A stretch of DNA of 64,000 nt, from NCBI RefSeq assembly GCF_018350175.1, contig NC_058383.1, forward strand, positions 31,806,001-31,870,000, in the 5' to 3' direction. The DNA is from Felis catus. Taxonomy: Eukaryota. Positions 572 to 39,853 of this stretch are shown in pieces. Numbering within the stretch: the stretch's first letter is position 1; every line of letters starts with the position of its first letter. The notes beneath the pieces were generated by a model. That model was given only the letters and a program-made list of their open reading frames with translations, made no database searches and was not told the origin of the DNA. A program made the position numbers and the translations under genes.

Positions 572-738
572 AGACCCAGACCGAGGCCAATGTGGCCCTC
601 CACGGAGGGGATGGTGGTGTCAGCGTGGACGTGGCAGCGTTGGTGGCCTGGCCGATGGACGGCACTCTGGAGCTGATGGTGAATGCCAGCCACGCGGTAC
701 CCGCTCTCCGGGCGCTGGGCCTGCCCTTCGCCAGCCAG
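572..738 (+). CDS. exon A ([55 protein letters not shown])
   Basis: cttctctgcccttag acceptor, CAG|gtgaga donor; phase 1 to 0. Confidence 0.85.
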
Positions 739-3700
739 GTGAGACGTGGGTCCCCCTACCTCCACGCTGGGCCGGTCTCCCCCCAGTTCTACCCACTCCA
801 TCCGGTTCCCAGCCTGTGCCAGGCCCGCTCTGTGCACGACTGACCGTGCTCTCTCTCTCTGTGTCTCTCTGGCACTTTCCAGTCGGTGAAGGCTGTTAGT
901 GACACTGACCGCTGGAACCCGTGTCTGCTCAGCCGTCTTTGTGTTTGCAGCCCTGGGGCGTGTGGACGGGCCTCCTGCGGCCCGAGTTCCAGCTCCCCGC
1001 CCTGCGTGCTTTTTTGCCCCTTCCGGTCTCGTGTTCAAGTGAAAGCCCAGCTTTGGTCTGTGGAGCACCCGGGTGCTCAGCGCCGGGGTTTTCTGTGCCG
1101 TGACTCCTTTCCTCCTCCTAACACCCCGTGAGAGGCGGGCGGCAGAGTCCTTAGGAATCTCGGCTCTGGGAGTCAGATCCCAGCTCTGATGCCTGCGGGC
1201 TGTGTGGCCCGGGGCTGGTTCCTTAGCCTCTCTGTGCCCTCAGTCTCATGAAATGGGGGTGATACTTGTGCTGATAGCACAGGGTTGGGGAGCACGGGGA
1301 GAGTTCGCATCAGTTACACCTGGTGGAGCAGGTGTTTAGAAGCTTTGGCTGCCGCTGTGATGGTAAGTCGCCGTCATCACTGTCTCCGGGTCGCACGTGA
1401 GAGGGTATGCCACCTGCCCAAGGTCATGTGGCAAGCGGGCAGCCAAAGGGGCTCTGGCTGGCAGCTGGGCCCCTTCCCATGCTGCCCTCCCACATCTGGG
1501 AAGAAGAAGCTGCTGTGGCCCCGTGAATGGGGTCAGGCTCCGGCCACTGCCCCTTGGCACAGAGTCGCCTTTCCCGGCTGGGCCCTCTGGCTGCCCGGCG
1601 AGTCACTGGCACATTCCAGAAGCCTCTTGTTTTCGATTAGCAGCACATCCCCGCCCCCACTCCACTCTGCCCCGAGGAAAGGCTATTCCCAGAGGCCCTG
1701 TCACCCCTCATGCAGGGGGTCTTTGTCACTGGACCCCCCCCCCCAACTGAGGGAACCTGGTTCCTGCTCCCTCTGACTTCATCTAAACCCCCTTTTCTTG
1801 GTCTCGGGCCCCGTGGTGGGGAGACGTGGTGGGGCTCATTCTCTGCTGGCGTCCTGGGATGCAGGCCTGGTGGGGTGCACTCTGGGCTGCAGAGCGGGGC
1901 CTGGCTTGGGAGGGTCCTCGGGCCCCCCGTACCCCCCATACCTCACAGCCTGCTGCTTCCTCAGCTCGTGTTCCAGAAGCTCTGGGCAGAGGGACAGATG
2001 CACTCTTCCCTGCAGCTGACCTGTGATTCTCAAGCCAGCCCGGTCCTTGACGTGCGTGGCCGGAGCCAGGTGCTCAGGTGAGGGGCTCCCTGCCACTCTG
2101 CCCGCCCCCCTCCCCCACCGAGAAGAGAGGGATGGGTGAGGGGGAGAGATCAGCTGGGACCCTACCGCATGCTGACCTCTAACCCCCAGCGGCTCCTTGA
2201 ACCCTCCCCACAGCCCTACTGCACAGATGTGGAAAGAAAGGCTCAGAGAAGCATAGCAACCTGCCCAAGGCCACACAGCTCGTAAAATAGCCTTGGCCTT
2301 TGGGGGGGCAGGACACAGATGAGGAGTTCCTGGTCCCACAAACTAAATGCATCCTAGGCCTCAAATTCAAATTAGTCATTGTTAGAGCTCTTCAGTCTGG
2401 GGACCTGCCAGGTGGCTGGCCCGGTGCCCGGTGGCCTCACGCATGTATGAAGTCGGGGGCCCCCAGGCTCCAGCCCCCGTACCAGGTCGCCGAAGGGTGA
2501 CTGTGCCCGCCCAGGGTCATGGGGCCACATCTGGGGAAGTTTCTGGTTGTTGTAGCTGGGGAGCTACTGGCTTCTAGCGGGCAGAGGCCAGAGATGCTGC
2601 TACATGCACACGTCAGCCCACAGCCACGAGTGACACCACGGTGTGGCCGAGCCACCAGGAAGGGGCGGCAGCCTGGAGCTCACAGCACTGGGCCGCCACG
2701 AGCACCTTGGCCTGGAGGGGCCAGGGGAAAGCGTGCCGTGTGCACTCGGCTGCCAGGAGCGAGCCCATGTTTCAAATGCTGCCGTCTAGACCCTGCTGAG
2801 GCTTCCACTGGCCAAGCCCGAGAGGGCCTATTGATGGGCCCGCCGGAGACACTCAGCCCGGCACCGCTATAGCTCTTTATGTTGAGGGGGAAACTGAGGC
2901 TCAGAGAGGGTAATTGGGGAACTTTCCCCGGCCAGCACCCGACGCAGGCCGGGCGGGGATGGAAACGCGTGTCACCTGACCCCGCACCACGCGGCCCTTG
3001 GGCCTGGGGTGTGCGAACGCCCCCCACCAGCCCCCGGCCAGGTTCCTGGATCTCCTGCCCTCTGCCGGGGAGGTTGGCCTGGTCCCTGACCAGCCATGGG
3101 CGCCCTCGTGCCTGGCCTCAGGCACACTCTGTCCTTCCTTCCAGCAAAGAGCTGCAGCTCTCCGGCCGGCACCACCTCCCTGGCCTTCTGGGCCGCTGCC
3201 CCCGCACAGCCTCAGCCAAGGTAACTGTGCCCAGCCGCCCCTGAGCCCTGACTGCTTCCAGATGCCCTGCCGAGGTGGGAGGGGGCCCTGCCGGGGACCG
3301 TAACCTGTCCACATGTGTCCGCAGGCCCACAGCAGGCCCCTGTGGGCTGCCCTCGGAAACCCCTGGCTCCAGCTTTCCCAGACACCCCCAGGCTCACATT
3401 CCTGGGCCGCACCCGCAGCCCCCCGCTGAGCCCACGAGACCCTGGGGAGCGGGGGAGGCCCGCCTGCTGGGGGCCTGGCACCGGGACCACCTCACCGGCC
3501 TGGCAGGCTCCCGGCAGCTGGGTCGAGTGGCACAGTGCCACTCAGGTTGAGGCAGCAGTGCCACCCGGGTGCCCTGTCTTGTTCCCACGGCCCAGGCTCT
3601 CTGTGTCTCTTCCCACCCTTGTCCATGAATCCCCTTTTCACCTGGGACCCCCAGGACAGCCCCTGGTCCCGCATCTGGCCCTGCGCGTGGCATTTGGGGG

Positions 3701-39675: not shown

Positions 39676-39847
39676 GCCAACACTAGGCTGCCAAAGATTT
39701 CACACCCGTCACCCCCTCAGCTCGGCCAAGATTCTTGGCTGAACAGAACCATCACAACGAAATGCCAGGAGGCACAGAGATCACACTGGGTCCAGATACA
39801 GCCAAGGGGGGGATCATCGTCCATGATTTCAGAATCCTTCCATGGAC

Positions 39848-39853
39848 AATAAA
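39848..39853 (+). terminator. candidate poly(A) signal of the LLTP-like gene
   Basis: AATAAA in non-repeat sequence downstream of the candidate stop codon. Confidence 0.45.

What the first reader, a model, noticed from the sequence alone, without database searches (positions are those of the whole stretch)
572..39853. Hidden apolipophorin/apoLTP-like large lipid transfer protein gene in a placental mammal
Seen: 23 phase-compatible exons, hardly visible in the ORF track, splice into about 1100 codons. The order is about 610 aa of alternating hydrophobic/polar beta strands (exons A-M), about 240 aa of amphipathic helix-like sequence (N-R), then VWD (S-U) and C8 (V-W). Established: a beta belt, helical region and C-terminal VWD is the layout of invertebrate apolipophorin-II/I and apoLTP. 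The characterised placental members of the family, APOB and MTTP, have no VWD, and placentals lost vitellogenin. From memory, the human locus next to RMI2 is the uncharacterised LOC400499. Inference: mammals keep a third, lipophorin-type lipid carrier whose particle, cargo and receptor are undescribed. The locus is probably annotated already; the biology is what looks open.
Basis: partly seen in the sequence, partly recalled or inferred. Interest (0 to 1): 0.92.

Follow-up and report, generated by a model that had tools for sequence, protein, structure and literature searches.

The report
Cat-family copy of uncharacterised LOC400499 lipid-carrier gene
The window holds the last 24 exons of a cat-family copy of LOC400499, a huge secreted relative of apolipoprotein B that databases already list in vertebrates from sharks to humans but that I found no study of; this copy has one premature stop codon.

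Summary
On the + strand, 24 GT-AG exons (572-27285, plus a small last exon at 39659) splice into 1108 codons. In order they encode about 610 aa of beta-strand meander (E1-E13), about 240 aa of long helices (E14-E18), a VWD domain (E19-E21) and a C8 domain (E22-E23). Both assembly gaps lie in introns, and no exon is missing.

The gene is a felid orthologue of human LOC400499 (96-97% identical to lynx, tiger and jaguar proteins). Full-length orthologues (3200-4200 aa, shark to human) carry a signal peptide, Vitellogenin_N, the open beta-sheet domain, Pfam PF21013 'LOC400499 family', VWD and C8. The closest solved relative is ApoB-100 (E 3.5e-66), ahead of lipovitellin and MTP. So the lipophorin-like reading holds as a layout.

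It is not hidden or new. RefSeq (including a curated human precursor), UniProt, Pfam and DIOPT already list it. I found no paper on its function.

In this assembly, codon 555 (18816-18818) is TGA where all 21 other mammals compared have Arg or Gln. Everything else is intact.

The parts
572..738 (+). E1 (first exon inside the window; its first 2 nt complete a codon begun upstream); beta belt
   Evidence: tblastn; acceptor ...cccttag|AG, donor CAG|gtgaga
1965..2077 (+). E2, beta belt
3145..3220 (+). E3, beta belt
6210..6347 (+). E4, beta belt
7641..7803 (+). E5, beta belt
9914..10035 (+). E6, beta belt
10651..10791 (+). E7, beta belt
12258..12371 (+). E8, beta belt
12468..12596 (+). E9, beta belt (conserved LDLSWD...QNLTYE)
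13138..13299 (+). E10, beta belt; acceptor moved 30 nt downstream of the first guess, to match all homologues
14168..14302 (.). Assembly gap 1, inside intron 10, abutting a (CCAC/ATCC)n tandem repeat at 13660-14167
   Evidence: no felid-specific indel across E10/E11
15441..15605 (+). E11, beta belt
18276..18444 (+). E12, beta belt
18811..18995 (+). E13, last beta-belt exon; contains the premature stop
18816..18818 (+). In-frame TGA (codon 555 of the window model). Seven other felids, the other carnivores, macaque and elephant have Arg; rhino, horse, minke whale and pig have Gln.
   Evidence: no consensus splice route around it; no SECIS in the 3' UTR
19222..19314 (+). E14, helical region
19491..19695 (+). 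E15, helical region
20770..20909 (+). E16, helical region (PLATLK..PLDEVW motif conserved down to shark)
20991..21088 (+). E17, helical region
24083..24264 (+). E18, end of the helical region
25674..25879 (+). E19, VWD N-terminal part
   Evidence: Pfam VWD positions 3-72 at 25685-25870 (sub-threshold on its own)
26038..26215 (+). E20, VWD middle part
26580..26689 (+). E21, VWD C-terminal part (GLLGTNDNE motif)
   Evidence: Pfam VWD positions 136-156 at 26588-26650
26871..26984 (+). E22, C8 first half
27144..27285 (+). E23, C8 second half; donor TGTG|gtaagc. Reading through this donor gives the 31-codon tail to 27380 that the lion RefSeq model carries.
34989..35141 (.). Assembly gap 2, inside intron 23 (27286-39658)
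39659..39853 (+). E24, terminal exon: completes the codon split at the E23 donor (Val), then GEFA and TAA (stop at 39673-39675); 3' UTR up to AATAAA at 39848-39853
   Evidence: lynx, jaguar and snow leopard proteins end ...QCVGEFA

Best explanation
This is the 3' third (24 exons, 1108 codons) of a felid orthologue of human LOC400499. [quoted passage not shown] Its N-terminal lipid-nucleating module is most like that of apolipoprotein B-100.

Shown: the exon model; orthology; the family's architecture (signal peptide, Vitellogenin_N, open beta-sheet, PF21013 domain, long beta-strand region, helices, VWD, C8); and the predicted fold of the part encoded here.

Inferred mechanism (about 55%): the protein enters the ER. 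Its N-terminal module acquires lipid, probably with MTP as ApoB and lipophorin do. The amphipathic beta-strand ribbon, whose last 600 residues are encoded here, wraps a lipid core. The amphipathic helices lie on the lipid surface. The cysteine-rich VWD-C8 end serves disulfide-stabilised binding or multimerisation. That would make a circulating or secreted lipoprotein scaffold of the lipophorin type.

In this assembly the reading frame is interrupted once, by TGA where all 21 other mammals compared have Arg or Gln, probably a CGA>TGA change. If that base is real, this copy is truncated or silenced before the helices, VWD and C8.
For: Exon model: colinear tblastn hits and GT-AG junctions.

Orthology: 96-97% identity to lynx, jaguar, snow leopard, tiger and fishing cat proteins. 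The window falls inside Felidae in a maximum-likelihood tree.

Family architecture: Pfam on the elephant and turtle proteins and on the lynx and sea otter proteins. All 47 invariant and all 20 conserved Cys positions of a 46-species alignment are kept in the window model.

Superfamily placement: the family profile against PDB gives ApoB-100 at E 3.5e-66 over positions 24-1015, lipovitellin at 4e-40 and MTP at 1.8e-11. DIOPT lists APOB and LOC400499 as the human orthologues of fly apolpp (PMC12561791).

Fold: the AlphaFold model of the sea otter C-terminal fragment has about 44 consecutive ~10-residue strands (pLDDT 80-93), then 240 aa of helices, then VWD-C8. Foldseek matches the strand region to ApoB-100 chains at E 1.5e-5 to 5e-5 over 636-709 columns. 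VWD-C8 matches VWF and mucin D assemblies at Z 16-17, rmsd 3.5-4 Å.

Secretion: N-termini with signal-peptide character in alligator, axolotl, shark, sterlet and wallaby. The human RefSeq entry is named 'precursor'.

Long-term constraint: open frames of 3200-4200 codons in well over 100 species, from sharks to primates.
Against: The N-terminal LLT module lies outside the window, so it is known only from orthologues.

Exon-by-exon Pfam hits in the window are below threshold.

There is no expression, proteomic or lipid-binding evidence of any kind.

The Foldseek match to the ApoB belt is geometrically loose (TM 0.17-0.28, rmsd 11-18 Å). The helical region has low pLDDT (40-66).

The protein evolves fast: 77% identity cat-dog and 71% cat-macaque.

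The TGA means that this copy may not make the full protein.
Confidence: 0.8

Rival explanations
1. In this animal or species the gene is a null allele or a very young unitary pseudogene. The TGA is a real substitution, and the transcript would be a target for nonsense-mediated decay because ten exon junctions lie downstream of the stop. This reading is compatible with the identity above; it concerns only whether this copy works.
For: The TGA sits in a codon that is Arg in seven other felids, in the other carnivores, and in macaque and elephant, and Gln in rhino, horse, whale and pig. That pattern fits a hypermutable CGA codon (my inference; no orthologous DNA was seen). No consensus splice route avoids the stop, and there is no SECIS element. 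No Felis catus protein appears among the listed hits or in the felid clusters, although eight other felid species do.
Against: All 47 invariant positions, 87 of 89 near-invariant positions and all 20 conserved Cys positions are kept, with no indels. There are 17 lineage-specific substitutions against 15 in fishing cat, so no acceleration. Any loss would therefore be very recent, or polymorphic.
Confidence: 0.4
2. The TGA is a base-call or assembly error, or a heterozygous variant of the sequenced individual, and the species has a working gene.
For: It is the only defect in 3.3 kb of coding sequence, and the rest of the frame is perfectly conserved.
Against: Nothing in the sequence points to an error. 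No homopolymer is involved, and the nearer assembly gap is 4.5 kb away. A C-to-T change at a CpG is the commonest kind of real mutation (established knowledge).
Confidence: 0.3
3. The family is an LLTP by descent but does not carry lipid in bulk. It would act instead as a clotting, pathogen-binding or matrix protein, as crustacean clotting protein and the immune roles of vitellogenin and apolipophorin do.
For: The C-terminal VWD-C8 is closest to the multimerising D assemblies of VWF, mucins and FCGBP. The protein evolves fast, as immune proteins often do. No known plasma lipoprotein class lacks an assigned apolipoprotein (my knowledge).
Against: The predicted amphipathic strand ribbon, about 590 residues long in the part encoded here, and an ApoB-like N-terminal module are what lipid-wrapping LLTPs have.
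Confidence: 0.25
4. It is a mucin-, otogelin- or zonadhesin-type VWD gene, not an LLTP.
For: For the VWD-C8 region alone, the best solved matches are FCGBP, VWF and mucins.
Against: All whole-length relatives carry Vitellogenin_N, the open beta-sheet and PF21013. There are no TIL or further D domains, and no mucin repeats.
Confidence: 0.01

Closest known systems
LOC400499 family (Pfam PF21013; human NP_001357633.1 'putative uncharacterized protein LOC400499 isoform 1 precursor', 3320 aa)
   Same: It is the orthologous gene. The exon-encoded sequence is colinear, 96-97% identical to other felids and about 71% to macaque, with the same VWD-C8 end.
   Different: Only the last third of the gene lies in the window. 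This copy has a TGA at codon 555 of the window part.
Apolipoprotein B-100 (PDB 9bd1, 9bde, 9ea7)
   Same: It is the closest solved relative of the family's N-terminal 1000 residues (E 3.5e-66). It also has a long meander of amphipathic beta strands, and Foldseek matches the belt at E about 1e-5.
   Different: ApoB has no VWD or C8. No DUF1081 or ApoB100_C domain was found in this family. Here the belt is split over many small exons, whereas APOB has one giant exon 26 (my knowledge).
Insect apolipophorin-II/I (Drosophila apolpp)
   Same: The overall layout is the same: LLT module, long beta region, C-terminal VWD. DIOPT pairs apolpp with APOB and LOC400499. One snake orthologue is auto-named 'apolipophorins'.
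   Different: Pfam finds no DUF1081 hit. No furin site is conserved in 40% or more of 46 orthologues near the N-terminal module. A C8 domain follows the VWD. No direct sequence comparison or tree with insect proteins could be made here.
Vitellogenin / lipovitellin (PDB 1lsh)
   Same: It shares Vitellogenin_N, the open beta-sheet and a C-terminal VWD. Lipovitellin is the second-best solved relative (E 4e-40).
   Different: There is no DUF1944 shell domain. This protein is twice as long. It is retained in placentals, which lost vitellogenin (established knowledge).
D assemblies of VWF, MUC2, MUC5AC, MUC5B and FCGBP
   Same: The VWD plus C8 fold matches at Z 16-17, rmsd 3.5-4 Å over 224-241 residues.
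   Different: There is a single VWD-C8 unit without TIL or E modules. The protein ends 5 residues after C8.

Membership tests
LLTP superfamily | N-terminal Vitellogenin_N (LPD_N) module followed by the open beta-sheet domain | tested here: met
   Met in orthologues: elephant P0013 and turtle P0029, and the precomputed Pfam columns for more than 150 orthologues. The corresponding exons lie upstream of the window, so this could not be tested on the window itself.
LOC400499 family (PF21013) | PF21013 domain after the open beta-sheet | tested here: met
   Lynx P0199 (96.8% identical to the window model) hits at E 9.6e-280; elephant and turtle hit at E about 1e-279. The domain is encoded upstream of the window.
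LOC400499 family (PF21013) | Colinear orthology of the window's exons with family members | tested here: met
   All 24 exons align in order with no felid-specific indels, and 47 of 47 invariant columns are kept.
Apolipophorin-II/I | DUF1081 (PF06448) after the LLT module | tested here: not met
   No PF06448 hit at E<=0.01 in P0013 or P0029.
Apolipophorin-II/I | Conserved furin (RX[KR]R) cleavage that splits the precursor into apoLp-II and apoLp-I | tested here: not met
   The only RX[KR]R column shared by 40% or more of 46 orthologues lies just before the VWD (turtle residue 3611), and the motif is absent from the window copy (RLKHR).
Apolipophorin-II/I | C-terminal VWD | tested here: met
   VWD scores 33.9 bits in lynx and 44.8 bits in turtle. 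The split hits in the window fall at 25685-25870 and 26588-26650.
Apolipophorin-II/I / apoLTP | Phylogenetic grouping with insect apoLp-II/I or apoLTP rather than with ApoB or vitellogenin | not testable with these tools
   No insect sequences could be retrieved; the hit lists were filled by orthologues. The only support is DIOPT, cited at second hand.
Apolipoprotein B | ApoB-specific domains (DUF1081, ApoB100_C) and absence of VWD | tested here: not met
   Neither domain was found, and a VWD is present.
Vitellogenin | DUF1944 / Vit_b-sht_shell (PF09175) | tested here: not met
   No PF09175 hit.
VWF/mucin-type D assembly | VWD + C8 + TIL + E | tested here: inconclusive
   VWD and C8 are met by sequence and by fold. 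There is no TIL hit, and the protein ends right after C8.
Selenoprotein (TGA = Sec) | SECIS element in the 3' UTR and a conserved TGA or Cys in orthologues | tested here: not met
   No SECIS at E<=1 in 39500-40500. Orthologues have Arg or Gln at this position.

The most novel reading that the evidence does not exclude
Vertebrates, humans included, make a lipoprotein scaffold independent of ApoB: a roughly 3300-aa secreted LLTP with an ApoB-like nucleation module, its own beta belt and a VWD-C8 end. It would form a particle class, or a local lipid shuttle, that nobody has isolated. It may have been missed partly because no mouse or rat protein appears among the hits, although five other rodent genera do. 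The cat-lineage copy seen here would then be a natural knockout or truncation.
Probability: 0.4. Interest if true: 0.85.

Novelty: already known. Interest (0 to 1): 0.5.

Why it matters
Textbook accounts give placental mammals two LLTPs, ApoB and MTP. A third one exists: 3300 residues, secreted, conserved since before sharks and bony vertebrates split, and present in humans with a curated RefSeq entry. It has no published function. In the library searched, 12 papers mention LOC400499 only in gene lists, and one states that it 'remains unidentified'. One suggestive HDL-C association signal lies in a human intron of the gene (P = 3.9e-6, PMC10869499). If the protein carries lipid, it bears on lipoprotein biology and on how ApoB and lipophorin evolved.

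Tried and rejected
- Exon-by-exon Pfam on ten stop-free pieces gave only two sub-threshold VWD hits. Domains had to be confirmed on near-identical orthologues.
With no orthologous DNA there was no codon alignment and no dN/dS.
It was built and used only in local scripts. The sea otter fragment P0215 (75% identical) stood in for it in the fold.
- Human proteins appeared in hit lists (P0188, P0242 and others). They were not fetched into alignments, and no human contig was used.
- 'Vitellogenin domain-containing protein' A0A5N3WQN5 in reindeer plasma proteomics is not the muntjac orthologue, which is A0A5N3VPZ8. It is probably ApoB, so I rejected it as protein evidence.
- Selenocysteine reading of the TGA: no SECIS, and orthologues have Arg or Gln.
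- Splice routes around the TGA all need weak non-consensus donors and remove conserved residues.
- The ESM Atlas search returned only generic LLTP clusters. The first attempt failed on length.
- VIA alignment of the belt returned beta-barrels at rmsd about 20 Å, which is meaningless. ApoB chains longer than 3000 residues were excluded from that tool.
- Stop-free stretches downstream (51995-52909 and five others) have no Pfam match. Adjacency to RMI2 could not be tested.
- An LLTP tree with insect apoLp-II/I, apoLTP, ApoB, vitellogenin and MTP was not possible, because orthologues filled both hit lists.
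Full report
**What is in the window**

The window is GC-rich for its first 28 kb. It is full of carnivore SINE fragments, visible as recurring translated motifs. A scan of stop-free + strand stretches showed protein-like pieces, including the two halves of a VWD domain at sub-threshold score (Pfam). 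I used one piece holding two neighbouring exons (window:12240-12596:+) to search 1.8 billion representative proteins. It returned 40 hits, among them proteins of 1835-3879 aa. Mapped back by tblastn, these are colinear with the + strand from 571 to about 27290 in some 20 segments.

**Exon model**

I resolved each junction by scoring GT/AG pairs against the homologues. Three boundaries were then corrected from a multiple alignment: the E10 acceptor to 13138, the E22 donor to 26984 and the E23 acceptor to 27144.

The C-terminal tails of other species' proteins showed that E23 normally ends at a strong donor (TGTG|gtaagc, exon end 27285). From there it splices to a small terminal exon. I found that exon at 39659: it completes the split Val codon, then reads GEFA and TAA.

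The final model has 24 exons, all GT-AG, 3329 nt and 1108 codons plus stop. Exon GC is 67% and GC3 is 84%.

**Assembly gaps**

I checked these. Gap 1 (14168-14302) lies in intron 10 and directly follows a (CCAC/ATCC)n tandem repeat at 13660-14167. Gap 2 (34989-35141) lies in the 12.4-kb intron 23. The window model has no insertion or deletion relative to seven other felid proteins. No coding exon is therefore lost in a gap, and the frame does not depend on either gap.

**The premature stop**

The model has one internal stop: TGA at 18816-18818, five bases into E13. At this position seven other felids, the other carnivores, macaque and elephant have Arg. Rhino, horse, minke whale and pig have Gln. 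That is the pattern expected of a CGA codon mutating at its CpG on either strand. This is my inference, since no orthologous DNA was available.

- No consensus splice combination avoids the stop.
- There is no SECIS element in the 3' UTR.
- Everything else is intact: all 47 invariant positions, 87 of 89 near-invariant positions and all 20 conserved cysteines of a 46-species alignment are kept.
- The window lineage has 17 private substitutions against 15 for fishing cat.

The stop is therefore either very young, polymorphic, or an error. 

**Whose gene it is**

The window model is 96-97% identical to Iberian lynx, jaguar, snow leopard, fishing cat, tiger and bobcat proteins, and 76-79% identical to dog, bear and seal. 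A maximum-likelihood tree places it inside Felidae on its own branch. An earlier follow-up note of the scan calls this genome 'the cat'. I did not verify the species.

The orthologue set includes human 'putative uncharacterized protein LOC400499', with a curated NP_ entry named 'precursor'. It also includes whales, ungulates, primates, five rodent genera, elephants, marsupials, monotremes, birds, reptiles, amphibians, sturgeons, sharks and rays. Nearly all entries are named 'uncharacterized protein'.

No Mus, Rattus or Felis catus protein appeared in the lists or in the felid clusters. That is suggestive only.

**What kind of protein**

Full-length members carry Vitellogenin_N, Vit_open_b-sht, Pfam PF21013 'LOC400499 family', VWD and C8. 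N-termini in alligator, axolotl, shark, sterlet and wallaby look like cleavable signal peptides.

A profile of 46 orthologues searched against all PDB sequences finds:

| Solved structure | E-value | Note |
|---|---|---|
| ApoB-100 | 3.5e-66 | profile positions 24-1015 |
| Lipovitellin | 4e-40 | |
| MTP | 1.8e-11 | |
| FCGBP | 2.1e-70 | through the VWD-C8 end |
| VWF | about 1e-42 | through the VWD-C8 end |
| MUC2 | about 1e-28 | through the VWD-C8 end |

These values are; the single-sequence version is. DIOPT, as cited in PMC12561791, lists APOB and LOC400499 as the human orthologues of fly apolpp.

DUF1081, ApoB100_C and DUF1944 are not found. No furin site is conserved near the N-terminal module. 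The family therefore shares the lipophorin layout without meeting the defining features of apoLp-II/I, ApoB or vitellogenin.

**Fold of the part encoded here**

I therefore folded the sea otter C-terminal fragment P0215 (1093 aa, 75% identical, aligned to model residues 18-1103) with the 46-sequence alignment. Mean pLDDT is 70.

| P0215 residues | Predicted structure | pLDDT | Window exons |
|---|---|---|---|
| 2-592 | about 44 consecutive ~10-residue strands | mostly 80-93 | E1-E13 |
| 595-836 | long helices | 40-66 | E14-E18 |
| 843-994 | VWD sandwich | mostly 30-73 | E19-E21 |
| 999-1093 | C8 helices | mostly 50-76 | E22-E23 |

Hydrophobic periodicity on the window's own model agrees: a period near 2 dominates in E1-E13, and a helical moment in E15-E18.

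Foldseek matches the strand region to ApoB-100 structures (9bde, 9ea7, 9e9r) at E 1.5e-5 to 5.7e-5 over 636-709 columns, but loosely (rmsd 11-18 Å). VWD-C8 matches VWF, MUC5B, MUC5AC and MUC2 D assemblies at Z 16-17, rmsd 3.5-4 Å.

Conservation along the window is uneven. It is highest in E16-E19, E21 and E23, at 45-59% identity to turtle or shark.

**How it most likely works**

Shown: the gene model, the orthology, the architecture and the predicted fold.

Inferred: a secreted LLTP whose N-terminal module nucleates lipid, and whose amphipathic strand ribbon and helices cover a lipid core. The VWD-C8 end would give disulfide-stabilised binding or multimerisation. I put about 55% on bulk lipid carriage and about 25% on a clotting, immune or matrix role.

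Open frames of 3200-4200 codons in well over 100 species rule out neutrality for the family as a whole. The protein still evolves fast: 77% identity cat-dog and 71% cat-macaque.

**Is it new**

No, as a sequence. RefSeq, UniProt ('Vitellogenin domain-containing protein'), Pfam PF21013 and DIOPT all hold it.

As biology it appears open. All 12 papers in the library that mention LOC400499 do so in gene lists. One says that it 'remains unidentified', and one counts it among genes without a functional protein product. Searches for a vertebrate apolipophorin-like protein found only invertebrate work. A plasma-proteomics lead turned out to be a different protein.

**Verdict**

The function is untested. 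The locus is already annotated elsewhere. This copy carries one unverified nonsense codon.

Noticed in passing
window 36269-36391 (+): This L1 ORF2-like fragment in intron 23 is 93% identical to the C-terminal tails of the tiger and fishing cat RefSeq proteins. Those models therefore splice E23 into an exonised repeat. The elephant seal and bobcat models end in SINE-derived tails, and the lion model reads through the E23 donor (equivalent to window 27286-27380).
   Followed up: partly
window 13660-14167: A (CCAC/ATCC)n-type tandem repeat array (periods 4-100) runs right up to assembly gap 1. In translation it gives a long proline/histidine-rich false ORF (13560-14516).
   Followed up: yes
window 39659-39898 and 44533-44679: The rhinoceros gene model P0001 continues past C8, and its extra residues match these stretches weakly (35-49% identity, with stops). 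This suggests conserved 3' UTR or downstream non-coding sequence that was mis-annotated as coding in the rhino.
   Followed up: partly
window 51995-52909 (+): A 305-codon stop-free stretch in a region of about 53% GC has no Pfam match. Its nature is unknown.
   Followed up: partly
hit lists: No Mus, Rattus or Felis catus protein appears among the orthologues, although Peromyscus, Cricetulus, Acomys, Sigmodon, Scotinomys, guinea pig, rabbit and eight felid species are present. This could mean lineage losses or pseudogene annotation. It was not tested.
   Followed up: no
window 20770-20909 (E16): The felid E16 is 16 residues shorter than in most mammals (two in-frame gaps of 9 and 7 aa in the helical region). 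All eight felids share this.
   Followed up: partly
orthologue alignment A1, column 4857 (window E18, about 24230): A dibasic RLK[RK]R motif just before the VWD is present in 21 of 46 orthologues but reads RLKHR in the window. It may be a facultative furin site that would release the VWD-C8 end.
   Followed up: no
lizard P0021 and relatives against turtle P0029: The middle of the protein, upstream of the window part, aligns to itself at several offsets (22-34% identity). The belt therefore seems to have grown by internal duplication.
   Followed up: no
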